A stretch of DNA of 64,000 nucleotides from Botryllus schlosseri (lineage: Eukaryota): positions 11,036,001 through 11,100,000 of the forward strand of contig CM119382.1 of NCBI GenBank assembly GCA_051294905.1, read 5' to 3'. The notes beneath the pieces were generated by a model. That model did no database searches. It saw only the letters and a program-made list of their open reading frames with translations, and was not told where the DNA came from. Both the position numbers and the translations under genes were made by a program. Of the stretch, positions 11,693-63,905 are shown piece by piece. Numbering within the stretch: position 1 is the first letter of the stretch; each line of letters starts with the position of its first letter.

Positions 11693-11753
11693 ATGAGGAC
11701 AATATTCCTGTCTTCGTTGATCCTCTGCTTATCTTGTGGATCGTTGGGATTTG
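11693..11753 (+). CDS. ADGRL: Exon 1: signal peptide MRTIFLSSLILCLSCGSLGF(A), phase-1 donor
   Basis: acgATG context, basic n-region, hydrophobic core, donor TTG|gttagt. Phase 1 matches the exon 2 acceptor (G+CC = Ala). Confidence 0.8.
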
Positions 11754-20124: not shown

Positions 20125-20243
20125 CCTTCTCTGATGACAACGTGCGAACCCAAAGTCAGCTTGCTTGTGAAGACTACGAAATCACGCTGAGATGCCCGGG
20201 AAGCGATATCATTACCATAAAAGGAGCTGCCTACGGCAGACAG
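20125..20243 (+). CDS. ADGRL: Exon 2: RBL/Gal-lectin part 1 (AFSDDNVRTQSQLACEDYEITLRCPGSDIITIKGAAYGRQ)
   Basis: Acceptor tttttag|CC, donor CAG|gtatat. The motif LACExYxIxLRCPGSDxIxIxxAxYGR is typical of latrophilin RBL. Confidence 0.95.
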
Positions 20244-22902: not shown

Positions 22903-22988
22903 GATGATATGACGTGCGTTGTCAACTCGGATCAAATGCAGGACATGCATTGTCGTCTGCCGAACGCGAAGCAAGTCGTCGCCAAAAG
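22903..22988 (+). CDS. ADGRL: Exon 3: RBL part 2 (DDMTCVVNSDQMQDMHCRLPNAKQVVAK-R); not in the ORF track
   Basis: attttcag|GAT ... AAAAG|gtgagt, phase 0 to 2. Aligns by eye to vertebrate [29 protein letters not shown]. Confidence 0.93.
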
Positions 22989-30639: not shown

Positions 30640-30749
30640 GTGTAACGGCAACAACTCGTGCGTTTTCATCGTAGGACCGCAGGTGTTTGAAGACCCGTGC
30701 CCCGGGACGAAGAAGTACCTTAACATCATTTACGAATGCGTACCTTACA
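30640..30749 (+). CDS. ADGRL: Exon 4: RBL part 3 ([37 protein letters not shown])
   Basis: ctctacag|G ... TACA|gtgagt. DPCPGTxKYLxxxYxC motif; completes the 8 RBL cysteines. Confidence 0.96.
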
Positions 30750-44900: not shown

Positions 44901-47900
44901 TCAAGTGAATAACGACACTGTGTTTGTGGCTAGTTGAGGATTCAGCGCAGTGACAGTACGGACCAAATTAGATTCTGACGGCTGATTTGATATTTTCGAG
45001 TTGAACTGCGCCGGTTTAGGATATCAGCCTCGAATTCGAGCCGCTATCGTGTCCGGATCCGGTATATTCACGTACGAAATCTAATATCTAAATCCGGCCG
45101 AAATCCACCGCTTTATTCAATCCCCGACAGCGTAGCGCATCTCGAAAATAAGAGCGATAATTGTCACTCTTGAATGAGGGTTATTAGTGAAGCGTGAAGA
45201 TATTCGGTGATGTATGTCATCCGGACTCCGTTACCGTTTTCACGGAATTAGGTTAGATTTTAGGCAGCCCCTCACCGGAGACAAATTAAATCAGCAGTAC
45301 CAGTACTATGCAAGAAGCACAGGTTCAAGTTAGTGCAAAAGTCCGACCACCGGTACGGTACACACAAGGCCTTTCTGTTAGGCAGGTGCGCTCTGTTTTC
45401 AGCGTCTGAAATTCCAGCTAGTGTTCTAGGGAGAAAGTGCGCTGACGGTGTGAACTTTTCTAGACTCCGCCGTGTAGGATGTGACTATCAACATAGCCGT
45501 ATTCACTTTCGTTCAATCAATCCCGGGATTGATTAATCCAACTATTCAATGGACCCGTCGACTAATCCAGACGGACGCGATATCCAATACTTGTTTTTCT
45601 GACGGCACTGTCGCTATGTCGTGTTGCAGCGAGCGGAAGGGATATTTGTACTGAAATAGACTTTGTCGTTGCGTCTATAGTTAGGTAGCAGGCACGGCGA
45701 AGGCCGCAATTAACGGCTATTAGCGTATAACCGTCAGTCCCGTTTGTCGAAGAAGCGTTGTTTATGACGCGTTTTAGTGTAATTGTTGGTTTGCTTCATT
45801 ACCGCGTGAAACCAATTCGGCAGTACGGCTTGGAATCTTGAATACAGTGGTCTTTAGACACTTTAACGTAACGCAGTCTTGTTGACTGTCTCTTAACCGC
45901 GGTTCTATCCTAGAGTTAGTCAATGTAATTCGGGCTTTTAGGGTATTGAATTACGGTGTCGTAAACAATTGGTTTTTGTAAACAATGTGACGTACCGTCG
46001 CGGTGTTAGTCATCGGTTGTAAATACCTTGTCGGGTCTGTGTGCGTTTGTGCGTCGGTCCGCATTACCAACGGAGCAATTGTTTTAGTAAGCAGGTATTG
46101 AACATTTTTATAGCATATGAAATCTGTGCCGGTAGCGGTTGTGTGTGAAATACGGTGACGTACGATTTGAATAATTCGATCTAATCCTCTTATATATCAC
46201 GAGTCGATGTAGCGCTTAATGAGACCATGTTTAAACTGCTACATTGTATATTTATACTTTCGATATTTGCCCTGTCGAGATATATAACGCGGTCCGTTTC
46301 CCACAGATTTGCAGACGTGAGGTGTCCGTTTGTGTGCGACTTGTCGTTGATAGCGCGTAATTCTGATTTGGACGTAGTTCTGGCTCAGGAATGATTTATA
46401 GCGCCCGATGTAGTGTAGCAGCGCGCTGTAGCAGGATATACAGGAAGATTAATGTGACTGGACTACGCCAATTGGAATTCGCAATCGGGCACGTATGCGC
46501 GCCATTTTAACGCGAAAGCTGTCGATGGATATTAAAATCGTGTTTGATAACTTGATATTAATGTGCCGGCCAGTGTTTTAGCGGGGTGTCGCTGAGTAAT
46601 TGCTCAAAATTTCCGAACACTTGAGCGAGATTGGATTAACGGATGAATCGGACCAAGTGTACAGCGGGGCGGCGTAGTGATTACAGGAGACTGTTGTTTG
46701 GGTAGCGGCGAGTAGATCCTTTTTTCTTTCCATTCCTCGCCAGATACACAATGAAGTGCCGAATATTCTGCGCTGGCTTTTGTTTTTAGCGGTATTAGAG
46801 CCGTGTCGATAGTTGAAACTTTTTTAGCGAATCCGCGCTGGTGTTTTTTCGAGAGTCATTCGACGCCGGGCAATTGTGCGATCGGGTGAGAGAACTTTGC
46901 CGCGCGGGGTCTCCGAAAATCTTTCATTCCAGATCAGTCAGTGTTGAGGTATGGCAGTATCCATAGGCGACCTTTCTGCTTGGATTAGCCCGGTTAGAGT
47001 GCAGATACACGGGAAGTTATGCGTTGTGGAAAGTTGTAACAGTAGCATAGTGGAATGCAGTCTGCGTTCTGCTACCCCGCAGCGTTTATTCAAATGTATT
47101 CCGGCCGTTCTAAATGTCGCGTCGAGCGCGCCCAGCGTGCCGCTGCCGTAATTCCGTTTTTAATCGGATAAAGGGTGAAATAAGCTAAACAGACAGGCCA
47201 TATGTTACTTTTTTATTTAAGCGATTGTTACTCTATTCCGTGTCACATCATGTTACTTCACGGTCTTTAGAGCGTACCTGATAAACTCATCGATTTGTCA
47301 GAAGAATATATTTCAGCGCTACCTCACACGATAGTAACTAACGCTTCGGTTATGCATCAGTGTAAGGTTACCGTTGGACTTATCGTGATGAAGTTCTAAG
47401 GTATATATGTAATTTGTAAGTGTCAGATAGGTTCGAGAACGCTATTAGTACCAGCGAGATAGTGCAGTTAATCTCGAGATTGTAATGCATCTATGCCACG
47501 GTCGAAGTTTTGAGGTGATAGATCTTGGGGCGGTGACAACGTTTGGTTATTTATTACGGAAGAATTGTGCTAGACTTGCCGAACCGGTGGGATGTGTTCG
47601 CTGTACACATTGCTGTAAAAACCTTGCGAAATATCACCCGGTAATCTGTCGGCGGAACATTGTATGTGCGTAGCTGTACGTAGCTCCTACCGGATTGCAT
47701 GCGAGATTAACACTGGGACGACCTCGTCGCATTGTCGCAAAGTGCCTATTAACGAAGATTTCCTGTGTTAGCAGAGTCTAATAGGATAAATACCATGGTT
47801 TAAGACTCGATTCTTTTGTAACAATCGCCGGTACGTGCAAAGACCCCACGGATATTCAACCAGTCCGGAAGTACGCATCGCATGCGATAAAAATCAATCG

Positions 47901-47941
47901 GGAACGGCCGGTTGGCTATTCTTTGTCGAGATATAATCGCC

Positions 47942-48026
47942 ATGAAATCACAATTTTTCGTCATTGTTATTTGGATATTTATTGTTAACGTCACACGAGG
48001 CGGGATATATGCGTCAGGCGCAGACG
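47942..48026 (+). CDS. ADGRL: Putative alternative first coding exon 1b: second signal peptide MKSQFFVIVIWIFIVNVTRGGIYASGAD(V), in frame with exon 5
   Basis: gccATG context, K at residue 2, hydrophobic core FFVIVIWIFIV, small residues before a likely cleavage site. Strong donor GACG|gtaagt in phase 1, matching the exon 5 acceptor (G+TC = Val). Confidence 0.7.
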
Positions 48027-49130
48027 GTAAGTTTCGTACCGATGCTTTACCCTAGGCGTATTAGCCCGCAATTTCTCCATTTATGACACGGCGGTCGAAA
48101 AATAAATAAGCCAGTTTTCGATTATATACACAGGAGCTTAACGTGTCGCGTCGGAACTGACTTCCCACGTTAATTGTAGCATGACTTGGATTAATAACGG
48201 TATTGATGACACTTGTAAACTATATCTCTGTGAGATTGCCCGGCCGAAAGCCCCATATGGCGTTAAAGTCTGTAATTTTTCCCCGCCACGTATCGATCGT
48301 AACCTAAATACGGGATCTTTTGTCTGTCGGACTATCGTAAACGGTCGTAAAGTGTGACTTGTCCCATAGTTTTTCGGTGTTTCGCCTAATGTGCGTTACT
48401 CCATACCGCGCTTTTGAAATCGTATTGATGTTAAGGCATTAAAGCAGTTAATTGGGACGCGTCGCAGTTTTTGGTGCGCGGTTTCCTTTCGCGAGAATAT
48501 TTTACGGCACGCCAAACACGCGGCAATAAAAGTGACGTCATATTGACTCTCGACTTTATGCGGGCGTGTTCGGAATTGTGGGTTTTGGCGTTTCGGTGGG
48601 AAAACACTAGCATTTTTGGTGGGAATGTGTGTTACACTGGTGGCGGTGTTTATCTTCCAAACCGTGCTTAGCCAACCTGTTCTGTTCGAGGGCGGCGCGT
48701 CTATTTGCCAATAACAACATTCTTGAATCTGTACGCGATTTGTCTCCAAGATACTCGCTACCATTCTGAAGCCGAGCCGCCCCGATGTCTGCCTTGTATT
48801 GGAAATAGGCTTCTGAATATTTTCCCTCTAAATACGTGAGTCACGCCACTGCGATATCCCGCTTCACTGTCGCAGAAATTTAGTTTGTTTCGCCTCGTAA
48901 TTCGATATGCCTCCTTTTTATTTATGCGCGGCGCGTATTAACCCATTTTTATCGACGAAAACCCGAGTTCATTCGCCGCCGCGCAGATGTCTTCAATGAA
49001 CACCACTCGAGGATCGCCGAGAGCGTGCTACGTCACAATCAAATCTGTTACGTCGCATGGTTTGCTAACGTTAATCGAAATAATGCACATGCTATAATCG
49101 ATTGAATACAATGTTTTTTGGTTCTCTGCT

Positions 49131-49231
49131 AGTTGATGAAGATTACTCAGCCGAGAATATTCGGGCTTATTTCAATATGACTATGTTAATCAATCAATTG
49201 TGTATTGAAGTTCTGTACCTCCAAGAAGCTC
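49131..49231 (-). mobile_element. Family A arm, terminus followed by TTAA
   Basis: cagccgagaatattcggg...ttgaagttctgtacctccaagaagctc|ttaa. Confidence 0.75.
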
Positions 49232-50051
49232 TTAAATGCTACAATCAAGCATAACCCCGTTTATATTCACAATGCCGCGGCGATGCGATTAATTCATTGC
49301 GCTTTTGTGCTAGTTAGCTGGTCGGTAAGCGGACACCCCGGCGAGATTGTTGACGGTCTAGCGCAAATAATTCTTCTTAATTACGATCGTTATTTGCCGG
49401 GATCAGAGAGCCGTTTGATGTCGCGGTGTTTATACGCAACAAAATATATTTGCTCAAACAAAAAGCGCTATAGCGATAGATTGTTTCATCGCCCGCCGCG
49501 GTGTATATACTGTATATGCCCCGATTCACACTCGTATGGCCCGGTTGTGCAACCGATGCATTGTGTGAATTCTTTGAGTTACAACCAGGGAAATGGACTT
49601 GGACGGGAGCCTGAAATCCAGCAATGGTTCTAGGTTTTGACATATATGTGATATAGCTATTATGAAAAATCAAGTAAGTTGTAAAATCTCTCGAAAAGTA
49701 TCAGTTTTTCGATTCATACCCCCACTGATATCAAGATGTAACTGCGCCTAAGCGTTAGCAGTCTCTCAGGGCTCCTCCTCGCCATCTGATCCGCGTAAAC
49801 GGCGTCTTAAAATGCCCAGAAGTGGACCGTGCTGCAAATCGGCAGGTTCGGAATCATAATAAAGAATATCGGCCTGGTGTAAATAACCATTGTACCACAC
49901 ACCACAAACAACAACTGCGACCATGCACGTTCCAAAATTGTACCACACACCACAGTCTGAAAGATGATAGTGGAATATCACAATCGGTGCGCGATGCGCC
50001 CTGGTCACAATCCTCATACTCGTTTATTAACTACGTTGATTTATCTTGCAG

Positions 50052-50160
50052 TCATCTCATGCCCCGGAAAATTACGCAGCGTCGCCTTACCCACGCAAAA
50101 GAAAACGCCTTTAGAGAACGACGCGGCCTGGATGAGGGACCCCTACCAAGTGTCCGAAAG
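50052..50160 (+). CDS. ADGRL: Exon 5: olfactomedin start (IISCPGKLRSVALPTQKKTPLENDAAWMRDPYQVSE-R)
   Basis: tcttgcag|TC ... GAAAG|gtaagt. CPGxL and AWxxDP motifs. Confidence 0.95.
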
Positions 50161-50417
50161 GTAAGTCGAAATCGCATATGGTCGCAGGCAACTGTCGGAC
50201 TGGTGGTAATCCTTTCAAGCGAAAACATTCGTCATCGCTTAACCTGTCTGAGGTGGCTTGGTCATGTTTATAGATGACTGATTCCCGTCGATAGACTCGC
50301 ACGAAAATTCGCGGTAACCAGCGGCACTGATTTTTTAAGTCGATCTTCCGCCAACTGCCTTTGCGTGCCACACAAGTCGACTTGCAATAACAACACGTAG
50401 GAAGCAATATATTTGGC

Positions 50418-50620
50418 GAATTTAAGTAGCTTAATATGGAACACGTTCGGAAATAACGCTGGATATTATACTGTAGAGACCGTCCGTCATGGCGGTATTT
50501 AACAATATTCCTTATTAGACACAACCTGAAATGAATTTGAGGAATTTAAGTAGCCTAATATGAACCACGTTCCGGTAAAATGCTGAATATTACTGTACAG
50601 ACCAACCGCCAGGGTGGTAT
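50418..50620 (+). repeat. Diverged tandem duplication, period ~124 bp
   Basis: gaatttaagtagc(t/c)taatatg...cacgttc...gctg(g/a)atatta at 50418 and 50542. Confidence 0.75.
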
Positions 50621-50803
50621 GTGATAATTGTCCTTGTAAGACATTAATCAACACAGCACGTGTACAGTGTGTGAATATAAAATCCACCATTTATTCGGTA
50701 TTTCATTTTGGAGCTTGTCTTGTGTTGTATATTTGACTTTGGAATTCTAATGAGCAAATAATAGTATTAGTCATAAACACAATACCGATGCAACACTATT
50801 TCT

Positions 50804-50957
50804 ATTGAAATGAACCCTACTCGAAGTTGACTAGACTAGAAGTTGCTGACGATTTCCCCTGACGAGTGTCAGCCGAAAATGTCCAGGTTCACTTCAATAT
50901 GAATAGTAGAATACACTATTCAATTGTATATTGAAGTTCTGTACCTCCAAGAAGCTC
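50804..50957 (-). mobile_element. Family A arm between two copies of a 12-bp direct repeat
   Basis: agttgctgacgatttcccctgacgagtgtcagccgaaaat...gtacctccaagaagctc. AACACTATTTCT at 50792-50803 and 50962-50973. Confidence 0.8.
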
Positions 50958-51096
50958 TTTAAACACTATTTCTGTAATGCGAATTCCCTTTTCCACCGTT
51001 TGAGGTGTAAATTGACGACCCACCCTTTTCGGTAGTCATTATTCGTTTTCTTTTGTATCAAGAGCCTGCTGGTAACACGGAAATTTCGCTTTTCAG

Positions 51097-51259
51097 AGTG
51101 TTTTATATGCCTTACATGAAATTTCAAACCGCGAATCTGTACGAATACGAGTCGTTCGGGGACATGTTCGGAGGGAAGCCTATCAACTTCTACCCCATGC
51201 CGGGACAAGTGGACGGCACCGGGTTCGTGGTCTACGACAGGAGTATGTTTTTCACGCCG
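51097..51259 (+). CDS. ADGRL: Exon 6: olfactomedin (RVFYMPY...VDGTGFVVYDRSMFFTP)
   Basis: cttttcag|A ... CCG|gtaggt. VDGTGFVVYD motif. Confidence 0.96.
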
Positions 51260-52774: not shown

Positions 52775-52974
52775 ACCGGCTCAAACGAAGTGGTCCGGTA
52801 CGATCTATCGACCCTACAAACTGAAGCCAGGGTGTCGTTGCCCGAGGCCAATCACGACAACACGTCCCCGTACGGCGTGGGCCTATCCACGGACATAGAC
52901 TTAGCCGTGGACGAAAACGGCCTGTGGGCCATCTACGCCACGGAATACAACGAAGGCAAAATCGTCATCAGCAA
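52775..52974 (+). CDS. ADGRL: Exon 7: olfactomedin (TGSNEVVRYDL...DIDLAVDENGLWAIYATE...IVIS-K)
   Basis: tttcgcag|ACC ... AGCAA|gtaagt. DIDLAVDENGLWxIYATE core motif. Confidence 0.97.
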
Positions 52975-53393
52975 GTAAGTCCGCATTCCGGCGCGGTTTA
53001 TCTTATCAGGGCGAAGATTTCAAAGATACACAGTCGGTTAATATTGCGGGAGTTATCCTGGTAGTTTGCAGTAGGTTATGATATACGGATGACTTATCAG
53101 CGTCGAATTCACGGCCGTGATAAACCCTCATGGGAAAATATGTGCGTGGGGACTGTTGGTTAAAACTTGACTCCATAACAGCGACGCGGTGTCGATTCGA
53201 TACACTGCCGACGCTATGATTTTATCCCGTGATTAATTAGCTCGAATGTGTGTTCTGGAAAAGTCGCACTTTGTCAAAACGCACTTGACGCCGAAACGGC
53301 AACTGTGTAGGGCCCTTAACGTTAAGCTCTTTAATTATTCACCACTTCCCTCTTAATTCACGAGTGCCTACTTTTCCGCCGCCCCGTCTGTAG

Positions 53394-53556
53394 GTTGAAG
53401 CATCATAACTTGGAAATTGTGAAAACGTGGACCACGGACTACGACAAGCTGTCGGCGCTGAACACGTTCATGGTATGCGGAGTGCTGTATATGGTGAATT
53501 ATAAAACGCTGAAGATCGACCATATGTTCAACACCACTTCTAACGTTGGCACGGAT
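53394..53556 (+). CDS. ADGRL: Exon 8: olfactomedin (KLKHHNLEIVKTWTTDYDK...FMVCGVLY...NVGTD)
   Basis: gtctgtag|G ... GAT|gtaagt. TWxTxYDK and FMVCGVLY motifs. Confidence 0.96.
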
Positions 53557-54589
53557 GTAAGTTTTTGCGTTGTTTTCAATTTTTGTTGCCATAGCTATAG
53601 CTGTAGGCAGTGTAGATGCATTTTTTTGTAATCTCAAATCGATAACCGTTACGCCATCGCTTTGCAAAACTTATATGTAACAATGTAACACTTCTCTTGA
53701 CCTGAAAGCTTAATCAACCGGAAATTGAGGCTTTGTGTCGATTTTGACGTCACAATGTAGGGATGGCTTTGTCGAAAATTTCAAGTCCAAACATTATTTT
53801 CAGTCATCAGTCCGTTCGCAATATGCCCGCGCGCATTTATGCTTTAAAACTATTTCACTTCGTTTAAATTATTCATTTGGAAACTTTTATTATTCAAATT
53901 AGGTAAAGTGTCAAAACTATGACGGTTTACCCTCCAAATACTGTTTATGCGGTGCGATTTACGACTTCGGCCCAAAATGATACATTCTTTGGCGGAGATG
54001 CGACATATGGCTTCAGTGGTTTGAGATTACCGATTTCACGGTCCCGTATTTCGGGGGAATAATTATTCCTAAACGCATCTGCGCGGCATTCCGTTGTCAG
54101 ACAGACATGCGATTTATTGTTCCGTTTAAATTAATCAGTAATTTTTACTTGGGATGACGATATGACCTTTCAATGTCTTAATAGTTAATACTCGTCACCA
54201 CCATGGCACTGACGTGTAATGTATCTGTTCTAATAGTAAATAGCCTGCAAAGTGCAAACCATATGATAAATCAGGGAAGAAGAAACAACAAATAATTGAA
54301 TAGCTGACTCGTGGTGCAGAACTTTCGGCTTTCATCACAAAATTCTTTGCAAGAATATATATATTTTCACTTTTAAACTATATTGGGTTATCGGTACTCT
54401 AAAGGGACCCAAAACAGATTCAAAGTATGACGTAGCAATCCAAATTACAGACTACGAAATTCGCATTGATACGATTGTAACAACAATAAGCTATGAAGCA
54501 TGTGGTACATAAATATCAACCAGACAAGTAGAATCGATAGATGAATAAAATAAAACCTAATAAATTAAATAAATAATAACTTAATAAAA

Positions 54590-54755
54590 TAACGGCAGTT
54601 GTGTGTGTGTGTGGCAACAATAAAACTTTAAAGTGTATACATTACGATAATAGCAATGCTACAGGTAAAATATACAGATAATAAAATGTAGATAAATAAA
54701 ATATTAATAATAAACAAAGATAACGGCGGTTGTGTGTGTGTGGTGTGTGTGTGTG
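54590..54755 (+). repeat. Duplicated AT-rich + TAACGGC(A/G)GTT(GT)n module upstream of exon 9
   Basis: taacggcagtt(gt)6 at 54590-54612 and taacggcggtt followed by GT runs at 54721-54755. Confidence 0.8.
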
Positions 54756-54804
54756 TTTTATAGTGAATGGGTATCAAATCTTATCTCTTCACTCCCCTCC
54801 ACAG

Positions 54805-55272
54805 ATCGACATCAGAATACCTCGCCTACGAAACACAACATCTACGATTAAATACAACCCGAAAGAGCAGAAACTGTACGCGTGGGACAAAACAATGGCC
54901 ATCACGTACCCACTCAATTTCACCCCGTTAGTAAACCCGTCCATTTCCACAACAACGTCCACCCCGTCTCCGTCCCCCAGTCGCCCTACCACAACCACAA
55001 GGACACCCACCACTACCACCCATCCCAAGGTCATCACCCCTACCCCGCCACCTATACTCCCGCCCCGGAAACGGTGTCCCGCCGTGGAGTCGGGCGGCAT
55101 CATGTGGCCGGCGACTGAGTTTGGGATGGTGGTCAAGGTGCAGTGCCCGGAGCCGTCGAAGGGTAACGCGATTTGGATATGCGGGAATAACGCGTCCGAT
55201 CCGAAGTGGGTGGGCGCGACTCCCGATTTCGGGCAGTGTGTCGCGGAGTGGATACAGGACGTACAGAAACAG
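54805..55272 (+). CDS. ADGRL: Exon 9: end of OLF (YNPKEQKLYAWD), Ser/Thr/Pro stalk, HormR domain (CPAVESGGIMWP...CPEPSKG...WIC...W...PDFGQC)
   Basis: ccctccacag|ATC ... CAG|gtaggt. YNPxxxxLYxW and the HormR Cys/Trp pattern. Confidence 0.96.
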
Positions 55273-55686: not shown

Positions 55687-55813
55687 CTGGATGATAATAT
55701 CGGCAGCGCCGCGGACCTGAGCGCAAGTTATCACCGCTCCCTACAGAACAGCATCGACATCGGACTGCAGATGAGCGTTTGGGACATTGTAAAATCCGTG
55801 GAGCTTCAGAAAC
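55687..55813 (+). CDS. ADGRL: Exon 10: GAIN subdomain A (LDDNIGSAADLSASYHRSLQ...VELQK-R)
   Basis: tgtcacag|CTG ... AAAC|gtacgg. Open frame; phases 0 to 1 fit both neighbours. Sequence similarity is weak. Confidence 0.85.
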
Positions 55814-55970
55814 GTACGGTTTTAACAGTAACACACTTTGATTTTGACTGAAATCGATAATTGCCTAGAATAGTTTCTTTTTCACTCGCTTGAAAAGTTT
55901 TAATTGTGCTTGAGTAGAAATGTACCACATTTCCTCTAGTCCTTTACTATTAAATGATGGCTTTGTTCAG

Positions 55971-56491
55971 TAGGGGTTTTCAAAAATGATTTTTTTCTCT
56001 CCAATCGTACTGGCTGCTTGATAAAATTGTTGAGTTACCTAATTTAAGCATACACACCAAATTTGGTTCAATTCCAACCAGTAGCCGCATTGCTACATGA
56101 GAAGAAAGTTTCTATTTATTATATAAAAATAAATAACAAAAAATTCTAAAATTTTCTGTTCACCCCATGGAAGTGTTTGGTTGTCTATAGAAACGATGTT
56201 CACCAAATTTGGTTCAATTCCCACCAGTGGAAGCGGAGTTATTGCACAAGCCAAATTTGGTGAGCATCGTTTCTATGGACAACCTAACACTTTCATGGGG
56301 TGAACAGAAAATTTTAGAATTTTTTATTTATTTTTATATAATAAATAGAAACTTTCTCCTGTAGCAATGCGGCTCCGGCTACTGGTTGGAATTGAACCAA
56401 ATTTGGTGTGTAGGCTTAAATTAGGTAACCTAACAATTTTATCAAGTAGCCAGTATGATTTGAGAAAAAAAGTCATTTTTGGAGACCCCTA
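55971..56491. mobile_element. hAT-type foldback MITE (family D), 521 bp
   Basis: Termini TAGGGG...CCCCTA. Perfect 8-bp TSD TTGTTCAG (55963-55970 and 56492-56499). The two ~240-bp halves are near-perfect reverse complements. Confidence 0.92.
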
Positions 56492-56576
56492 TTGTTCAGT
56501 CTAACTACTTCTGTCTGCCTGTAATCAAAATGGAATAAATTTCTTTTCTTTGCTACATCGCTATTTCTGGTTGCAG

Positions 56577-56707
56577 GGATTCTGACCAAGGCGTACGACG
56601 ACAGGGCGAATGCGGCCAACGTGATGGGATCCATGTTGAAGAGCGTTAGCCTGCTGCTAAGCGACGATTTGGAAGATAGCTGGCGCGGGGTACCCCACAC
56701 TATGCAG
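56577..56707 (+). CDS. ADGRL: Exon 11: GAIN A (RILTKAYDDRANAANVMGSMLKSVSLLLSDDLEDSWRGVPHTMQ)
   Basis: ggttgcag|GG ... CAG|gtacgc. The xVSxLL...xW helix pattern of GAIN-A. Confidence 0.9.
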
Positions 56708-57114
56708 GTACGCCTGAACCGAAGTACCTGTAATTATAGGGTGTAAGCTGTCCGTATTTTAAATGTCCTGTTACCAGAGATGGTCAGTAACAAAGTATTT
56801 TAGTAATTTGGAGTACTCGAGTAGGATTCAACTACCTGGACCATGTAGCCTACTTTCAAGACTCTGAATATATTTAGGTAGATATATTTTTAAGATATGT
56901 TTTCCTTCAAGTTTACAAGTGAAATTGTCATGACAACTGGACGGAATACCCCCTTTATCACGGTGACCGAGTAAATTTTCGAAAATCGCACCAATATGTA
57001 GTCATTTAATCATTTCTATCCACTGCCAAAATTATGACTTGTCGACCAAATCTAATTTCTTTGACCATTTCTGCCTATTACGTAGTTCTGTATTGATATA
57101 ATCAATTGTTGCAG

Positions 57115-57698
57115 AACAACGTATCCAGCGAGCTAATCCGTGTTTTGGAAGACGCCGCTTTCTTCCTGGCGTATGACATGTCCATACCTGCGGCCAACAA
57201 CAGAGTAAACTGGTCCGAAACCATGGTGTCCCTGGGCATCCGCGTGTTCCCGGTGACCCGCCACTCCAAAAACGCGTACCACGACAGCGTGCTGTGGTAC
57301 CCTGGACAGGGCGATGCTGTCACCCTAGACACCAACGCGCTTTTCGCCACGGCTGACGATTACGCGTCTGAAGACACACCGATCACCGCGTCCAACCAGA
57401 CAGTCACGAAACACTTGGCTGTCGTACTGCTGTCGTTTCGCAACATGGGAAAGTATCTTCGCGATATGAATCTGCGTGAAACTGACCCTGTAGACTCGGC
57501 AGTGTTGTCTGTGACGCCGGCGTTTATCACGAGAACTACTACCCGCGAACGGGCGTCCCGGAGTGACCCTGGCGAGCTGGTGATCGTGAATAGGTTCCCG
57601 ATGGACTTGGACGAAAAGCCACTGCTGAGGATGGTGTTTAGGCACGCCAAACCCGGGAAGGAGTATCACGTCTGCGCTTACTGGGATGATAAGAACAG
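57115..57698 (+). CDS. ADGRL: Exon 12: GAIN (NNVSSELIRVLEDAAFFLA...VCAYWDDKN-S)
   Basis: tgttgcag|AAC ... AACAG|gtggga. LIxxLExxAFxLA helix and the GPS-start CxYW. Confidence 0.94.
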
Positions 57699-58640
57699 GT
57701 GGGAACTGATGGTTTTGTACAGAGATAGTCAGCACTCCTACTTTTTTGGACTATACTCGAATAAGTTTTCGTTTACTTGAAAAAACTACTTGCGTCGTTA
57801 AGCTTTTAGACAAATCCCACACGTGTCGACTTCCCATACCATCAAGTTTAACGATCCTTTCAATCTAGTATGCCTACACACTGGTTCTTACAGATTTGCA
57901 ATTTATCAAGCTCTTGTCTCAAGCTTATTGAAATAGGCCCTAATATATGGACATCTAGTAGTTTGCTGAAGCTTACAAAGTGTTCGCTGGAAAACTGAAA
58001 AAGTGCCGTCAGACGCTTAGACGACATAACAAATATAGTATCCCAAGATATGGATTGATTGTATAGCCATGCTCTCAAGTATATGTACTCGAGATGGTGT
58101 TGACAAATATGTTCCAAGATAGCGAGGCGTAATTATTGTACGCTGTGAGAAGGGTATCTTTGTTTGTGCATGAAGTGTTGGTGACTGGTGCCTTTACAAA
58201 GTATGAATTCAATAATCCGGACTGCAGCATATTCGTACTACATAGATATTAACTGATATAACCTTGGAAAGATGATGCGTATAGTTTATTTCACGAATCC
58301 AATAATGGAAAGGTTAAACTTCTCTACCTATTTCGGCTATGGAGTGACTGGTCTGTCGGGACTTCGCAGCGGCTAGCTATTTGAAAGCGTATGTCTGACG
58401 TCAAAATTCCAAGAACTTTACTTGTAGAAGGTTAAAAGACTACTTCGAGAATTAGGACTTGACACAACCAAATACTAAATGTCAAAATTCTCAGAATTTT
58501 CCTTACGGCAGATAACAGACTACAGCGGCAAATATTCACTATTTGCCTTCTCTTAGCTACACGCTCCCGTGCTTATTTGTAGTTTTGGAATTTGTGACCT
58601 TTTTGGCTAAACACTATACCGTAACAACGCTTATTTGCAG

Positions 58641-58907
58641 TGACATGACCCCGCGTTGGTGGAGAAGCGGATGCAAGGCAGTCGAGACCAACTTCACGCA
58701 CACGACTTGCCAGTGCAGCCACATGACGCCGTTCGCGGTGCTTTCGTCCGAATCGTCGTTCCCCGCCATGGGTTCGGACACCCGTCCGTCCGGGCCCTCC
58801 GGCATTTCGAACAATGACAAAGAGCGGGACCTCCCTATTTTGAGGGCGGGACTATGCATTTCGTTACTGTTTTTGCTGCTCGTCGCCGTCACTTTGTTGC
58901 CTTTGAG
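58641..58907 (+). CDS. ADGRL: Exon 13: GPS (W..SGC...TxCxCSHM/TPFAVL) and TM1
   Basis: atttgcag|T ... TTGAG|gtaagc. GPS Cys/Trp pattern, then hydrophobic TM1 AGLCISLLFLLLVAVTLL. Confidence 0.96.
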
Positions 58908-59237: not shown

Positions 59238-59352
59238 TGCCACGAAACGCTTGCAAAGCGACATCAACACCATCCATAAAAATCTTGTACTATCATTAAT
59301 CGCCACTGAAGTCGTCTTTCTGATCGGGATCGACCAAAACGTTGTGCCTGTG
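59238..59352 (+). CDS. ADGRL: Exon 14: ICL1-TM2 (SATKRLQSDINTIHKNLVLSLIATEVVFLIGIDQNVVPV)
   Basis: atttacag|T ... GTG|gtgagt. LQSDxNTIHKNL...E..FLIGID is characteristic of latrophilins. Confidence 0.96.
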
Positions 59353-59469
59353 GTGAGTGCAATTTATTATTGATTTTGACGAAATATAGCAAGTCCGCCT
59401 TTGGGAACATTTCAAATTCATATCGATCATGTGCAATTGTATCCCAGCCGTATCGCATTTCAAGTATTA

Positions 59470-59760
59470 TGTTAGGCAATCATTTCTTATGCATGGACTT
59501 CTTGGATCGAATACTTTCTATTTTGAACTGTGTAATTTGTGCCCCAGCATTTACTGTAAGTCTTGGTGTAAACCTTAAACAATCCTCACTTGAGCAATGC
59601 ATATCCTTAGCACATGTAATACAGTATAATTGTACCCCAGCATTTACTGATCTCTTTGGAAGATTATCAACTAAATATTATTACCGTATCTTAAGCAATC
59701 CTTACTTGTGCATAATCTCCATACATCGAATAGTATCCATTTAGATGTGCCAGCATTAGT
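59470..59760 (+). repeat. Decayed tandem array, ~3 units of ~105-110 bp, in intron 14
   Basis: tta(g/a)(g/a)caatc.t.actt...gcat recurs near 59472, 59576 and 59691. ccagcatt recurs near 59544, 59637 and 59750. Confidence 0.6.
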
Positions 59761-59829
59761 TCTAAACTTCCAAGTCATAGTTATGCGACTTGAGGCCTCA
59801 TTTTATAACGCGTACCCGCTTTTTTCCAG

Positions 59830-60044
59830 GTGTGCGGAGTCGTGGCGGGGTTGCTTCATCTCGGTCTCCTGGCTACTTTCACATGGGCCGCTATTGAAGC
59901 TTTTCATCTCATGGCGATCTTGGGCGACGTGACGGACAGGCGCGATCGTTGGAGGTGGTACTACATTGTCGGATACGGAGCCCCGATTATTGTGGTCGCG
60001 GCGAGCGCCGCCGCGGACCATACCGGGTACGGAACGGGTGTTGT
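59830..60044 (+). CDS. ADGRL: Exon 15: TM3-TM4 (VCGVVAGLLH...YYIVGYGAP...GYGTG)
   Basis: tttccag|GTG ... GTTGT|gtaagt. CxxxAGLLH, W..IE and YYxxGYGxP motifs. Confidence 0.96.
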
Positions 60045-61081
60045 GTAAGTAGTGGGAAGCGATTGCATGCTTCATTTTTCATTTTAGATAGCGGGTTTTC
60101 GGTTGCATCGTAGATTTGTTTTGCGTTTCGTTTCGTTTGCGGTATCTGGCATTGCCAGCACACCGAACAACTAACACGCCTGCAAGCTTCTTGATGGAAT
60201 ACCACTTTCTCCATTTCGTCACAAAGACTAAATTCTTACCATACCTATGACTTGGTTAACCATAACCACATTTACTGACGTAAGCTCCTGATTTGTCGAA
60301 CCCATTGTTTTAATATACATATTCATAATACATTCATTATGAAAATATATTTGGGATCGGGGTTATTTGCCGTTTGCCTGCATTTTATGTTGTATTTGTT
60401 TCTATGTAACGTAGTAACACTCAAACTTTTTAAATTCTTCATTTGCCGACGATTGCCCCCAAAGAGTGTCAGCTAAAAAATCTTTGGGTTTTGATTGTGA
60501 ATATAATGTTATAAATGTATATTCATGTTTTGTACCCCAAAAAGTCTCTGCACATTTTCTTGTGTACTGTTCTGGCTGGACGTCAACGTTGGGGTAATGT
60601 GATGTCACAAATCTCATTCTGTAGTCGTGTATGCCTGCTGTGTGTGGTAGAGATGGCGCTTGTTGAAAGTATAACAAAATGATTAACGTTTTCCTTGGGG
60701 TGTACTTGAAGTTCCTAATGATGTCATTGAAATATTACCGTTCGCGGAGACACACATCAGTTATATAAACAGTGCCTCTGGTAACCAGGTAGCACTGTAA
60801 CAACATTTGATACAGTAGTGTGTCGCTAGAATTCACAAACATTTCAGAAGTAGGAATTGTGATACGTAACTCAATAACAGGATACCGAAAATTTTGATTC
60901 TCTTGCATGTGTTGATATCGTCATTTATAATAAATCTTATAGTGCGGATAACATGTTATACAACTGTTGACAGTCAAGTCCAATATTATTCACAAAGATT
61001 TTGTGTGGAACGGTAGTTTTTGTGATAGCGGTATTTGTTTGTGACTTTTTGGGTTTTAGAAACCTCATTCTTTGTTAACAG

Positions 61082-61228
61082 ATGCTGGCTCAAAACGGAC
61101 GGCAGCTTCATATGGAGTTTCATCGGGCCGTGTTGCTTCGCTATCCTCTGCTGCATCGCTTTTCTGTCGGTGACCATGTACAGGCTACATCTGTACTACT
61201 CTGACTCACCGAAACAAAAATCTGTCAG
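61082..61228 (+). CDS. ADGRL: Exon 16: ECL2-TM5-ICL3 (VCWLKTDGSFIWSFIGP...KQKSV-R)
   Basis: ttaacag|A ... GTCAG|gtaccg. CWL...FIWSFIGP motif. Confidence 0.96.
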
Positions 61229-61292
61229 GTACCGTGTTATGATGTAATTGTTAATGCCGAATCTCGGTAATGACGTTGATTTATATTTTTAG

Positions 61293-61464
61293 ATCGGGCG
61301 TTACGAGATCCTGTGTGCTGATGTTTTTACTTTGTGCCTTGTGGAGCTGCGGTGTGCTGTGGCTTAGCAACTTTCAGCCTCGGGCGACCGCGGTGTTCTT
61401 CTGCATCCTGAGCTCTTTGTACGGCATGGCCGCGTTTTTCCTGCACTGCATTTTGCCGAGCGAG
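61293..61464 (+). CDS. ADGRL: Exon 17: TM6-TM7 (RSGVTRSCVLMFLLCALWSCG...SSLYGMAAFFLHCILPSE)
   Basis: atttttag|A ... GAG|gtaagc, after a 64-nt intron. Two hydrophobic segments and the FxHC motif. Confidence 0.94.
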
Positions 61465-61832
61465 GTAAGCTGGGGATCTAGAGAATTCGGAAATTTGCGC
61501 GTAATCCTTCCAGTAGTATGGAGCCAGATTATATCTCGGTTGGATTTTTAAGATTTCAGCCAGATTCGTACTCGATTGGGGTTCACAGTATTCAAATTTA
61601 TCATTGCTACCCAAGTAGACATAGAAGTAATGTTGTATATTTCTTCTCAATTACATGTGGAAGTAGTGCTTTCCAATGTGTGTCCAAACCGCGTCAAGTG
61701 GATGTAGAAAATAAAAGGTCTAAAAATTATTAAATGAAGATGTTTCGAGAAGCAGATTTCGTCTGTAGCATAATTTTGGCCGTCAGTCGGAAGAAACGGG
61801 CCATTCTTAAACGCGTGTCATCTCCATTTTAG

Positions 61833-62019
61833 GTTCGAAAGCACTATTCTTCATGTTTCTCGCGCGTCGCTAAGCGCACGCGCCGTCGATCTGATCCGTT
61901 TACGAGCCACCGTCAATTTTCGACGAATTCGTCGCGACACGCCACTGGCATAGGACACAACGGTACCGGTAGACACGACCTTACCGGTTCGTACGGCGGA
62001 TTTTACACTCCAGGGACAG
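61833..62019 (+). CDS. ADGRL: Exon 18: helix 8 and proximal tail (VRKHYSSCFSRV...YTPGT-G)
   Basis: ccattttag|GTT ... ACAG|gtaaga. VRKxYxxC helix-8 motif. Confidence 0.93.
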
Positions 62020-62489
62020 GTAAGAGGAGTTTTGACATGATATGATAGTGGGATTAGCTGCAGTATGCTCGTTTATATCATTTTATCATTGGATATATAT
62101 GTATTGCGATTATATTGGGAAAGGCATGACCGTTATCGGAACTAGGAAAGTGTTGGCATTTCCCATGAGATTGGGCACTTAGTAACCCATACCAGCTGTC
62201 ATGGTTGTCTCATGTCTGGTTTAGCTGTCATTGACCAGGTGTTTAACCCCCACTCCCCCCACCCATGAGTATTGTAGCATCACTCTTTTTGACATAACTG
62301 TAAGGATAATGTATGAAGTGGAAATACGTTGATTTTACCCCTGTGCGAATAAAATATTCCCAGTTTTACATTGCGCTACCCGTAGTACCCGTACGTACTA
62401 AGCTCGAATTGGCCCTATAATTTTGAGTTCAACTAATCGCCAGAATCCAAATCCTCGGTACCTGCTCACTCACCGGTTTTAAATTTTAG

Positions 62490-62669
62490 GATGCACGACC
62501 ACTCTGCTGCCGATATCGTCCGCGCAAAGTGCCGCGCTGAACGTCAACCAAGGGCGATGCGTCTCGGACATGGACATCACCCGTATCACGCATATCGACA
62601 ATTCGCGTTTCGCGACACAAAGGGACCGTCACAGCGACGGTTCGGCAGTGGAGCTGGCGCGAGGTCTCG
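62490..62669 (+). CDS. ADGRL: Exon 19: cytoplasmic tail (GCTTTLLPISSAQ...AVELARGL-D); symmetric phase 1-1, 180 nt
   Basis: aattttag|GA ... CTCG|gtaagt. Open frame, GC-rich third positions. The ORF track shows a different frame. Confidence 0.88.
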
Positions 62670-63651
62670 GTAAGTTAAGCAGGCCTTTACAATGCTTGGA
62701 AATAGCGCGGTAAATACCCGTGTACTCAGCTAAATTCCGGTTGGCATTATCCATATTTTGTGGTCTCGTGACAGACGTTCAGTAAGTCTTTTTGAGTGCC
62801 TTAAAACACATCACTCATTTGTCCAAGAATGTCGCGTAATCGAACGTTTTCTTTCCATAGTAGAGAATTGTTCGAATTAATCGAACTATTCGATACAACG
62901 CATAGCTTTTTAAAGTATCGTGTGAAATTTTGTCAAAAATGAGTCCTGACAACCGCTAAAAGCTCTAATACACCGCATTAGAGTTTGAGTCACAAATCGG
63001 ACAGTCGTCTTTTTCCAGACATACTTAGATGTCGAAATATGATGCGATCAGCATTACTTATTGATGAAGACTGTTGATGTGTAGGGCACTGAACATGTAA
63101 GCCTGTACATTTGTATGTGTTCTTGTTTGCAGAACTATTTCATGTTATAGTAGCTGGAATACTAGGCCAAAAATCAAATCCAAATCTACGAAAATTGTAG
63201 TTCTAAGTTGAATAGGCTGATTAAAAACTCCTTGCTGTTCTCAAGCCAAGCTTGGCTGTCCACGATGGACCGTGCCCAAAATGTAAATCTACTAATAAAT
63301 ACCTCCTTCAATATGACTTGCTATGATATCCGAGAAGAATCAACCCGAAAATCAACTGAATCTCAAAAAGCGTAGTCCTAATCCCAATTTCTGCTAAAAA
63401 TACTCGCTTAATTTCAACAGTCCAAACGCATGCATCTTTTACGGGAGAGAAGCGTAGGCCTACAATCTACATGCAATGCCTCTTCATTCTTTCGTAGTAG
63501 GAATTCTATGTCTGACTGTGACTTTTAGACCCTGTCAAAAGTCCCAACCAATTCAAGTCCAAATATGCACACTCACACAGCTACCTGTGTCACCCACAGC
63601 AACTTTACTGTACATAAATTTTGAAATCTAAATTTTGAAATCTATTTCCAG

Positions 63652-63905
63652 ACTACAGAGACCCGCTACTGCACCACACCCACCCCGGGCACGGTGACGT
63701 GGTCAGGTGGCCGGAACACCGCTACGAACAGCCGCTGCCTCAAATCCCGCACTGTTCGACCATCGCGTCCACCGCGTCCGGGCATTACAACCACCTACAC
63801 GAGCACTACCCCAGCGGTAGCCATCACCATTTAGTGCCGCCCGGCGGTTGCAGCCACCAGCGTAACAACCACCATTACGAGACCATGGACCTGCCGCTGT
63901 GCAAG
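63652..63905 (+). CDS. ADGRL: Exon 20: His-rich cytoplasmic tail (DYRDPLLHHTH...HHYETMDLPLCK); gene probably continues past window
   Basis: tatttccag|AC ... AAG|gtaagc strong donor. Read-through would end VKHE* at 63962, with no PDZ-type terminus. Confidence 0.88.

What the first reader, a model, noticed from the sequence alone, without database searches (positions are those of the whole stretch)
47942..48026. Internal signal-peptide exon predicts a lectin-less latrophilin from a second promoter
Seen in sequence: about 2 kb before the first OLF exon, inside the 19.3-kb RBL-OLF intron, gccATG opens MKSQFFVIVIWIFIVNVTRGGIYASGAD. It ends at a consensus donor (GACG|gtaagt) in phase 1, the phase exon 5 needs (G+TC = Val, giving ...GADVISCPGKL...). 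The product (85 + 3482 nt = 1189 codons in window) keeps OLF-HormR-GAIN-7TM but drops the entire RBL domain. Established knowledge: the latrophilin RBL domain is the main teneurin-contacting module; fly and worm latrophilins have RBL but no OLF. Inference: this locus could switch between an RBL+OLF receptor and an OLF-only receptor by promoter choice. I do not recall such a dedicated second leader exon in latrophilins. Caveat: a weak in-frame GAG acceptor at 47930 would instead make a 96-nt cassette exon.
Basis: partly seen in the sequence, partly recalled or inferred. Interest (0 to 1): 0.82.

Follow-up and report, generated by a model that had tools for sequence, protein, structure and literature searches.

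The report
Lectin-less latrophilin from alternative first exon
An ascidian latrophilin gene carries a second, transcribed first exon inside its big lectin-to-olfactomedin intron that encodes its own signal peptide and yields a receptor without the lectin domain; it is real and shared with two other sea squirts, but the same isoform is already in their RefSeq annotation.

Summary
ATG 47942 opens a 28-codon, strongly hydrophobic leader that ends at GACG|gtaagt (48026) in phase 1. RNA shows the predicted 48026->50052 GT..AG joint in four runs from four studies.

- **A first exon, not a cassette.** Spliced contigs run colinear upstream to 47586-47773 and none shows a join at the 47930 acceptor. 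In two of three contig runs the rest of the laid intron is almost silent.
- **Usage.** The leader contig has about 40% of the depth of the exon 5-6 contig.
- **Conservation.** The same design sits in the same intron, in the same phase, in Styela clava (XP_039262534 and others) and Ciona intestinalis (XP_078485420.1). No counterpart was found in Clavelina or amphioxus.
- **Gene identity.** Pfam confirms SUEL lectin, OLF, HRM, GAIN/GPS and 7tm_2.

Three things are not shown: the transcription start, spliced-leader trans-splicing at 47930, and cleavage of the signal peptide.

Novelty is modest. The isoform already stands in RefSeq models of two relatives. Alternative promoters and lectin-less short isoforms of latrophilins are noted for mammals (PMC6629964, PMC6667449). 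I found no paper describing the ascidian form. The predicted vertebrate lectin-less N-termini that I inspected lack a signal-peptide-like leader.

The parts
11693..11753 (+). Candidate canonical exon 1: ATG plus signal peptide MRTIFLSSLILCLSCGSLGF, phase-1 donor G|gttagt. Inferred only.
   Evidence: Scan for an SP-like ORF with a phase-1 donor. Joined to exon 2 it reads ..SLGF-A-FSDDNVRT, which parallels S. clava ..SGYGFSDGNLRS, and the chain stays open. No RNA check was made.
20125..20243 (+). RBL (SUEL lectin) exon 2
   Evidence: tblastn to Ciona savignyi and S. clava latrophilins; splice sites read.
22903..22988 (+). RBL exon 3
   Evidence: tblastn; boundaries keep the frame open.
30640..30749 (+). 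RBL exon 4, the last lectin exon. Its phase-1 donor (TACA|gtgagt) is the canonical partner of exon 5.
   Evidence: Pfam SUEL_Lectin E=3.1e-09; sequence; its words are held fully by 8 probable-RNA runs.
47586..47941 (+). 5' untranslated part of the alternative first exon, at the longest extent seen. Spliced contigs start at 47586, 47709 and 47773. It holds short upstream ATGs (47592, 47664, 47699, 47795, 47882) and an AG at 47929-47930 that could serve as a trans-splice acceptor.
   Evidence: read-laying table 8, records 3, 8 and 16; the only raw-read depth upstream of the ATG lies in bin 47736-47902; upstream ATGs listed.
47942..48026 (+). Leader coding part: 28 codons plus 1 nt, signal-peptide-like, consensus donor G|gtaagt, phase 1.
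   Evidence: The joint 48026->50052 is seen in X24 raw RNA reads (2 reads, 2 starts) and in one contig each of X1, X2 and X5.
50052..50160 (+). Exon 5, the first OLF exon and the shared acceptor for both 5' ends. It holds the first OLF cysteine (ISCPGKL) and AAWMRDP.
   Evidence: Joints 48026->50052 and 50160->51097. Contigs begin exactly at 50052, which indicates a branch in the assembly graph (table 8).
51097..51259 (+). OLF exon 6
   Evidence: Joint in X1, X2 and X5 contigs.
52775..55272 (+). OLF exons 7-9 (52775-52974, 53394-53556, 54805-55272). The last also carries the Ser/Thr/Pro linker and the HRM domain.
   Evidence: Pfam OLF E=2e-19, 1.7e-12 and 1.3e-07; HRM E=1.7e-07; exon chain.
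55687..58907 (+). GAIN and GPS exons (55687-55813, 56577-56707, 57115-57698, 58641-58907). The GPS motif reads CSHM|TPFAVL.
   Evidence: Pfam GAIN E=3.3e-05 (23.8 bits, below Pfam's 26.5-bit cut-off for this fragment) and GPS E=4.5e-09; chain.
59238..63905 (+). 7TM and C-terminal tail exons up to the last donor inside the window.
   Evidence: Pfam 7tm_2 E=1.2e-13; tblastn to the S. clava protein; open chain of 1186 codons.

Best explanation
The stretch is the coding end of an alternative first exon of a latrophilin (ADGRL-like) gene in a stolidobranch ascidian related to Styela clava.

- **Shown:** the splice. Exon 47942-48026 is joined to the first olfactomedin exon at 50052.
- **Inferred:** the start site. 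Transcripts appear to start inside the 19.3-kb intron between the last lectin exon and the first olfactomedin exon, somewhere between about 47.43 and 47.77 kb.
- **Inferred:** translation from ATG 47942 gives a 28-residue leader with signal-peptide features. It replaces the canonical signal peptide and the whole RBL domain.
- **Inferred:** after cleavage the mature receptor would begin a few residues before the first OLF cysteine and keep OLF-HRM-GAIN/GPS-7TM.

Because both 5' ends feed the same phase-1 acceptor, the choice of start decides whether the receptor carries the lectin module. In vertebrates that module is required for teneurin binding. The OLF-first form is therefore expected not to bind teneurin through the RBL, while keeping whatever the OLF domain binds. 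This functional step is inference.
For: - **Junction.** The joint 48026->50052 (GT..AG) appears in a run on record as RNA (X24: 2 reads, 2 start points, first mate on the minus strand, as expected for a plus-strand RNA). It also appears in one contig each of X1, X2 and X5, so four studies in all.
- **First exon.** The three spliced contigs continue colinear with the genome upstream of the ATG to 47586, 47709 and 47773. They carry no unmatched letters and show no join at 47930 (table 8). The only X24 depth upstream of the ATG, in bin 47736-47902, comes from read pairs of the same orientation as the two junction reads (first mate on the minus strand; the tool files each read by its own strand). 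That fits a shared fragment, though pairing was not reported (table 2).
- **Local start.** In X2 and X5 almost nothing else in the laid part of this intron is covered. The exceptions are a weak X5 contig at 47429-47591 and two repeat-like high-depth bins. Those runs are therefore spliced RNA, and the upstream cover is local, not general pre-mRNA (table 2).
- **Usage.** Leader contig depth against exon 5-6 contig depth is 11.4/28.5, 20.1/52.8 and 5.0/11.4, about 0.4 each. Exon-5 contigs start exactly at 50052, as expected if two upstream partners exist.
- **Hint of regulated choice.** Within one study, X21 holds all sampled words of lectin exon 4 and none of the leader. X2 and X3 hold 0.93 of the leader and 0.38 of exon 4.
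- **Leader features.** Lys at residue 2, a 13-residue hydrophobic core (best 11-residue Kyte-Doolittle mean 3.46), small residues at TRG|G or ASG|A, purine at -3 of the ATG, and an in-frame stop 54 nt upstream.
- **Conservation.** S. clava RefSeq isoforms start ...MAVLSNTFTLWILLLSTIMNFGYATSND-V-ITCPGKL. Ciona intestinalis isoform X2 starts MYNAILFHWIWLLLYSAAGGDNTAIS-I-ISCPGAL. In both genomes this exon lies in the 3' part of the RBL-OLF intron with a phase-1 donor, and all three leaders have Trp at residue 11.
- **Single copy.** The region occurs once in the genome, so it is not a repeat-borne promoter.
Against: - No start-site data (CAGE, 5' RACE, full-length reads) were available. Contig ends are poor markers of RNA ends.
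- The Logan runs are only guessed to be RNA, although their spliced contigs argue for it. The one run on record as RNA gave only two junction reads.
- The colinear 5' region holds two to seven upstream ATGs, depending on the start. One (47795) is in a strong context. They may depress translation unless removed.
- SignalP could not be run. No protein-level evidence exists.
- No counterpart was found in the Clavelina or amphioxus intron.
- The DNA upstream of the leader shows no clear conservation with S. clava.
- The teneurin consequence rests on vertebrate data alone.
Confidence: 0.8

Rival explanations
1. The 5' end of the mature mRNA is made by spliced-leader trans-splicing at the AG at 47929-47930, 11 nt before the ATG. 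The colinear upstream RNA would then be outron. In the mild form the outron still starts at a local promoter. In the strong form no second promoter exists, and the long pre-mRNA from the canonical promoter is trans-spliced inside the intron.
For: - The relatives are ascidians, and other first-reader notes report spliced-leader use in this genome (unchecked).
- An AG preceded by a T-rich run lies 4-12 nt before the start codon in all three species: ttctttgtcgag|atataatcgccATG here, aacaacag|aaaaATG in S. clava, gctgtag|agtgaag|caccATG in Ciona.
- Trans-splicing there would remove all upstream ATGs here, and the upstream in-frame ATGs in S. clava.
- Logan contigs would clip a 16-nt leader as a tip, so its absence from contigs says little.
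Against: - Spliced contigs in three runs are colinear across 47930 at depths close to the exon's own. The only X24 raw-read cover upstream of 47903 matches the junction reads in orientation, which fits a colinear fragment.
- For the strong form: X2 and X5 cover almost none of the laid intron upstream of about 47.43-47.7 kb, while 47709-47930 is assembled. That points to a local start.
- No leader sequence was seen. A search of the genome with the Ciona leader as I recall it gave only chance-level hits.
Confidence: 0.13
2. The transcript is real but non-productive. It would be a cryptic intronic start whose RNA, loaded with upstream ATGs, is poorly translated, so the signal-peptide-like ORF has no function.
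For: Several upstream ATGs lie in the 5' region. At loose thresholds about one such ORF per intron arises by chance. Mouse aGPCR genes show dozens of 5' start exons, many of them minor (PMC6667449).
Against: - An ORF of the same length, phase and position, with Trp at residue 11, is kept in Styela and Ciona, while the flanking DNA is not alignable.
- About 40% relative depth in three runs.
- Zero of 200 shuffles reach the leader's hydrophobicity and donor score.
Confidence: 0.05
3. It is a 96-nt cassette exon (47931-48026) spliced between lectin exon 4 and exon 5, inserting a hydrophobic 32-residue stretch between RBL and OLF.
For: The AG at 47929-47930 is in frame with the phase-1 donor of exon 4.
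Against: No contig or read shows a joint into 47931. All three spliced contigs run through it colinear with the genome. The RefSeq models of the two relatives use the exon as a first exon.
Confidence: 0.02

Closest known systems
RefSeq predicted isoforms of the orthologous gene: Styela clava XP_039262534 / XP_039262554 / XP_039262563 (1682-1688 aa) and Ciona intestinalis XP_078485420.1 (isoform X2, 1567 aa)
   Same: A separate first exon in the 3' part of the RBL-OLF intron encodes a 26-28 residue hydrophobic leader with Trp at residue 11. It ends in phase 1 and joins the exon that starts I(S/T)CPG. The RBL is absent and the rest of the protein is unchanged.
   Different: This is a different species: 64% identity to the S. 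clava isoform and 43% to the Ciona one over the window's part. The S. clava model starts at an upstream in-frame ATG, which adds 29 residues. Here a stop 54 nt upstream excludes that. These are automatic models, and I found no paper describing them.
[quoted passage not shown] 3 legend), for example predicted ADGRL1 isoform X3 of Grammomys and isoforms X3/X4 of Alligator
   Same: An alternative 5' exon replaces the signal peptide and lectin exons. The product starts just before the first OLF cysteine (..FVCPGTL).
   Different: The three N-termini I inspected (MGPPPSAFFV.., MCSVMGMGGWGG.., and the longer Alligator X3 start) have no hydrophobic core; the two I scored have best 11-residue means of 1.05 or less, against 3.46 here. 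They therefore lack an evident signal peptide, whereas the ascidian exon supplies one.
Alternative-promoter isoforms of adhesion GPCRs in general (mouse Adgrl1-3 with 22-29 5' start exons, PMC6667449; ADGRB1 intron-17 promoter, cited in PMC13197933)
   Same: Internal promoters change the make-up of the extracellular N-terminus of one gene.
   Different: The examples those papers single out give 7TM-only or N-terminal-fragment-only products. Here one adhesion domain is removed cleanly and a new signal peptide is supplied.
Alpha- and beta-neurexins (analogy of mechanism, not homology)
   Same: PMC6629964 states that each neurexin gene gives a long alpha and a short beta form. That the beta form arises from an internal promoter with its own first exon encoding a signal peptide is my own recollection.
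   Different: Unrelated protein family. The neurexin case is experimentally established; this one is not.

Membership tests
Latrophilin / ADGRL subfamily of adhesion GPCRs (the gene) | N-terminal rhamnose-binding (SUEL) lectin domain | tested here: met
   Exon 4 hits PF02140 at E=3.1e-09. Exons 2-4 align to the RBL of the Ciona and Styela latrophilins. Present in the canonical isoform only.
Latrophilin / ADGRL subfamily of adhesion GPCRs (the gene) | Olfactomedin domain following the lectin (chordate-type architecture) | tested here: met
   PF02191 is hit in three exons, covering profile positions 85-246. Exons 5-6 align to the OLF start of relatives. PMC6422961 places the RBL+OLF+HRM ensemble in tunicates, lancelet and vertebrates.
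Latrophilin / ADGRL subfamily of adhesion GPCRs (the gene) | HRM domain, GAIN domain with GPS motif, secretin-type 7TM | tested here: met
   HRM E=1.7e-07, GPS E=4.5e-09 and 7tm_2 E=1.2e-13 on single exons. GAIN is weaker: E=3.3e-05, below Pfam's cut-off for the fragment. The GPS reads H-M|T instead of the usual H-L|T; cleavage was not tested.
Alternative first exon driven by an internal promoter | The exon is spliced to a downstream common exon | tested here: met
   Joint 48026->50052 in four runs.
Alternative first exon driven by an internal promoter | No upstream exon is spliced onto it; its 5' part is colinear with the genome | tested here: met
   Three spliced contigs end at 47586, 47709 and 47773 without unmatched letters, and none shows a join at 47930. 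Contigs cannot prove an RNA end.
Alternative first exon driven by an internal promoter | Mapped transcription start (cap) and promoter activity upstream | not testable with these tools
No CAGE, 5' RACE or long reads. The prokaryote-type promoter scan is not applicable. No conserved upstream DNA with S. clava.
Cleavable N-terminal signal peptide | Positive n-region, hydrophobic h-region of about 7-15 residues, small residues at -3/-1 of a c-region | tested here: met
   K2; FFVIVIWIFIVNV (13 residues, mean hydropathy 3.46); TRG|G or ASG|A. This is my own rule-based reading. SignalP was not available.
Cleavable N-terminal signal peptide | Actual translocation and cleavage | not testable with these tools
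   Needs expression of a tagged N-terminus.

The most novel reading that the evidence does not exclude
Ascidians keep an old, regulated switch in their latrophilin gene. One promoter would make a lectin-bearing receptor that can bind teneurin. A second promoter, with its own signal-peptide exon, would make an OLF-first receptor that reaches the surface but does not bind teneurin through the RBL. The switch would date at least to the common ancestor of Ciona and Styela. The two forms would be used in different tissues or stages. Vertebrates would have lost the signal-peptide leader and turned to the small splice insert between Lec and OLF to tune teneurin binding.
Probability: 0.4. Interest if true: 0.55.

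Novelty: new member of a known kind. Interest (0 to 1): 0.4.

Why it matters
In vertebrate latrophilins the lectin domain carries teneurin binding and the olfactomedin domain carries FLRT binding. How cells choose between these partnerships is an active question.

Ascidians are the closest invertebrate relatives of vertebrates. The ones examined here show one main RBL-OLF latrophilin of this type. A natural, conserved isoform that removes only the lectin domain yet stays secretion-competent would let each module be tested in vivo, in a system where isoform-specific reporters and knock-outs are easy (Ciona electroporation).

It also warns that reagents or mutations aimed at the lectin exons leave about 40% of this gene's transcripts untouched in the three runs compared. 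The general principle, alternative promoters reshaping aGPCR N-termini, is already established, so this is a useful example and not a new kind of mechanism.

Tried and rejected
- **Cassette-exon reading** (acceptor at 47930): no joint into 47931 in any run.
- **Repeat-borne promoter:** 47500-48100 is single copy in the 495.5-Mb genome.
- **Bacterial-type promoter/terminator scan and base composition** around the exon: not informative for a eukaryote.
- **Alignment of the upstream DNA with the S. clava counterpart:** no convincing conserved block.
- **Search of the genome for the Ciona spliced leader as I recall it,** plus GT: 55 hits against 37 for the reversed control, so chance level. This says nothing about trans-splicing here.
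- **Leader-like exon in the RBL-OLF intron of Clavelina lepadiformis and Branchiostoma:** none found, even at loose thresholds. The Clavelina short model P0071 (MLHFAVV-VCPGTF) is a read-through of the intron's 3' end, not a leader.
- **The look-up of encoding contigs with the short S. clava isoform:** found nothing, because only the longest product of a gene is on record. The long isoform gave the locus.
- **Search for this genome's own protein in the protein collections:** only a 193-residue fragment at 97% identity. I therefore could not tell whether this species' annotation already lists the isoform.
- **Automatic choice of the exon 6 donor** picked 51222, which the RNA joint (51259) overrules.

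Full report
**1. The observation**

The sequence is as described.
- gccATG lies at 47940-47944. It opens a 28-codon ORF, MKSQFFVIVIWIFIVNVTRGGIYASGAD.
- The ORF ends at 48026, followed by gtaagt. One base is left over, so the exon ends in phase 1.
- The next olfactomedin exon starts after ttatcttgcag at 50052 with TC. The join therefore reads GAD-V-ISCPGKL.
- An in-frame TAA lies 54 nt upstream. The ATG has a purine at -3.

The canonical last lectin exon ends at 30749, also in phase 1 (ECVPY, then A|TC = Ile). The two 5' routes are therefore interchangeable, and the intron is 19,302 nt.

I scanned that intron for ATG-started, hydrophobic ORFs ending at a phase-1 GT donor. Only this one was returned. 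None of 200 shuffles reached its hydropathy and donor score, although at loose thresholds about one candidate per shuffle is expected. Sequence alone is therefore suggestive, and the other evidence decides.

**2. The gene**

Single exons hit these Pfam families:

| Domain | E-value | Note |
|---|---|---|
| SUEL_Lectin | 3.1e-09 | exon 4 |
| OLF | 2e-19, 1.7e-12, 1.3e-07 | three exons |
| HRM | 1.7e-07 | |
| GAIN | 3.3e-05 | below Pfam's cut-off for the fragment |
| GPS | 4.5e-09 | |
| 7tm_2 | 1.2e-13 | |

A search with the GAIN exon found a Ciona savignyi latrophilin-like protein. A search with its OLF region found the ADGRL3-like proteins of Ciona intestinalis, Clavelina, Phallusia and Styela clava.

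Guided by the Styela protein, the alternative isoform is an open chain of 1186 codons up to the donor at 63905. It is 64% identical to the Styela short isoform and 43% to the Ciona one.

The window therefore comes from a stolidobranch ascidian related to Styela clava but not that species. The genome is 495.5 Mb in 219 pieces. PMC6422961 states that the RBL+OLF+HRM ensemble occurs in tunicates, lancelet and vertebrates.

**3. RNA evidence**

Twelve probable-RNA runs from four studies hold most sampled words of 47850-48026. I laid four runs on 46400-51400. The joint 48026->50052 (GT..AG) is present in all four:
- **X24**, on record as RNA-seq: two reads from two start points. Only about 6% of the run was read.
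- **X1, X2 and X5:** one contig each.

These contigs also carry the 50160->51097 joint. X2 and X5 cover almost nothing else in the laid part of this intron. The exceptions are a weak X5 contig at 47429-47591 and two repeat-like bins of very high depth. They are therefore spliced RNA assemblies.

The three leader contigs run colinear with the genome upstream to 47586, 47709 and 47773. They end there without unmatched letters, and none shows a join at the AG at 47929-47930.

The only X24 cover upstream of the ATG lies in bin 47736-47902. It comes from read pairs of the same orientation as the junction reads. That fits a shared colinear fragment, but pairing was not reported.

The exon thus behaves as a first exon with a 5' UTR of at least 170-360 nt. 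X5 also has a weak contig at 47429-47591.

Contigs of exon 5 begin exactly at 50052, and leader contigs stop 31 nt into exon 5. That is the mark of a branch in the assembly graph, meaning more than one upstream partner.

Leader contig depth is about 0.4 of the exon 5-6 contig depth in all three runs (11.4/28.5, 20.1/52.8, 5.0/11.4). This is only a rough measure.

**4. Both 5' ends are in use**

Lectin exon 4 is held fully by eight probable-RNA runs, including X1, X5 and X6, which also hold the leader. Within one study, X21 holds all of exon 4 and none of the leader. X2 and X3 hold 0.93 of the leader and 0.38 of exon 4.

With 8 and 15 sampled words, and a polymorphic species, this is a hint of sample-specific choice and not a measurement.

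**5. The leader as a signal peptide**

- Lys at residue 2.
- A 13-residue hydrophobic core, too short for a membrane anchor. Its best 11-residue Kyte-Doolittle mean is 3.46.
- Small residues at TRG|G or ASG|A.

Cleavage would leave the mature chain starting 2-8 residues before the first OLF cysteine. No SignalP run or experiment backs this.

The 5' UTR holds short upstream ORFs, at 47795 (in a strong context) and 47882, and more if the start lies further upstream.

**6. Conservation**

The Styela clava cluster holds long isoforms (1749-1774 aa) and short ones (1682-1688 aa; XP_039262534, XP_039262554, XP_039262563). The short ones start ...MAVLSNTFTLWILLLSTIMNFGYATSND-V-ITCPGKL. Ciona intestinalis isoform X2 (XP_078485420.1) starts MYNAILFHWIWLLLYSAAGGDNTAIS-I-ISCPGAL.

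I mapped these exons on the fetched loci:

| Species | RBL-OLF intron | Leader to OLF exon | Leader length | Donor phase | Trp at residue 11 |
|---|---|---|---|---|---|
| Window | 19.3 kb | 2.0 kb | 28 residues | 1 | yes |
| Styela clava | 29.3 kb | 3.2 kb | 28 residues | 1 | yes |
| Ciona intestinalis | 3.0 kb | 0.3 kb | 26 residues | 1 | yes |

My blind scan recovers both exons. No counterpart appears in the Clavelina (3.8 kb) or amphioxus (1.1 kb) intron. The exon is thus shared by a phlebobranch and two stolidobranchs, which suggests an origin before these ascidian lineages split. Upstream non-coding DNA does not align between the window and Styela.

**7. Mechanism and open points**

- **Shown:** the splice, the colinear 5' part, co-existence with lectin-containing transcripts, and conservation of the coding design.
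- **Inferred:** a local promoter, translation from 47942, cleavage, and a surface receptor lacking the RBL.

The main open alternative is spliced-leader trans-splicing. Other notes of this scan report it in this genome (unchecked). An AG preceded by a T-rich run lies 4-12 nt before the start codon in all three species. Trans-splicing there would strip the upstream ATGs. Contigs would not show a short leader, and my one read-laying run is spent. A pattern search with the Ciona leader as I recall it was at chance level.

Even so, the near-silent intron upstream in X2 and X5 argues for a local start rather than internal trans-splicing of the long pre-mRNA.

The functional consequence is carried over from vertebrates. 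PMC6422961 states that the RBL, and the sequence between RBL and OLF, are required on the latrophilin side for teneurin binding.

**8. What is known**

- Adhesion GPCR genes are known for many 5' start exons and alternative promoters. Mouse Adgrl1-3 have 22-29 start exons (PMC6667449), and the topic is reviewed in PMC13197933.
- The legend of Fig. [quoted passage not shown]
- RefSeq holds such forms for many vertebrates. One cluster has 786 members. The N-termini I inspected have no hydrophobic core.
- The ascidian isoform itself is already modelled in RefSeq for two species. Four literature searches found no description of it.
- I could not see this species' own annotation.

**9. Verdict**

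This is a real, conserved alternative first exon that gives a lectin-less latrophilin with its own signal peptide. It is a new member of a known kind. It is of moderate interest, mainly as a natural tool to separate lectin-dependent from olfactomedin-dependent functions in a tractable chordate.

Noticed in passing
window 50742-51075, 49072-49238 and 49740-49906: Short segments inside the introns reach contig depths of hundreds to more than 10,000 in all RNA runs, with many different unmatched ends. They look like widely transcribed repeat elements, not part of this gene (tables 2 and 7).
   Followed up: no
window 58641-58907: The GPS cleavage motif reads CSHM|TPFAVL (His-Met|Thr) instead of the usual His-Leu|Thr. 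Styela (NHMTSF) and Ciona (DHMTNF) share the Met, so ascidian latrophilins may cleave differently or less.
   Followed up: no
P0081 (Branchiostoma hybrid, ADGRL2-like isoform X6): An amphioxus predicted isoform makes the opposite choice. The lectin domain is joined directly to the Ser/Thr/Pro linker and the OLF domain is skipped.
   Followed up: no
P0004 (Ciona savignyi H2Y6J5) and P0071 (Clavelina CAK8676262.1): Both models carry residues that look like the translated 3' end of the RBL-OLF intron (ECVP-LIIFSA-VISCPG and MLHFAVV-VCPG). In the window the same read-through would give LIYLAV-ISCPG. They are probably annotation artefacts.
   Followed up: partly
P0062 (Styela clava XP_077974694.1, isoform X3): A third 5' variant in Styela replaces the canonical signal-peptide exon by MRLLNFTVALNAQ and keeps the lectin domain. 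The locus therefore has at least three alternative 5' exons there.
   Followed up: no
window 46575-47329 and 48294-49479: Run X1 alone has low-depth contigs (2.5-7) over intron stretches, with 2-3% differences from the reference. This is either pre-mRNA or DNA carry-over from a different haplotype, and it shows the high polymorphism of this species (tables 3 and 8).
   Followed up: no
window 47894-47915: An 8-bp GC-containing hairpin, followed by the T-rich run, sits just upstream of the AG at 47929-47930 in the 5' UTR. No significance is known.
   Followed up: no
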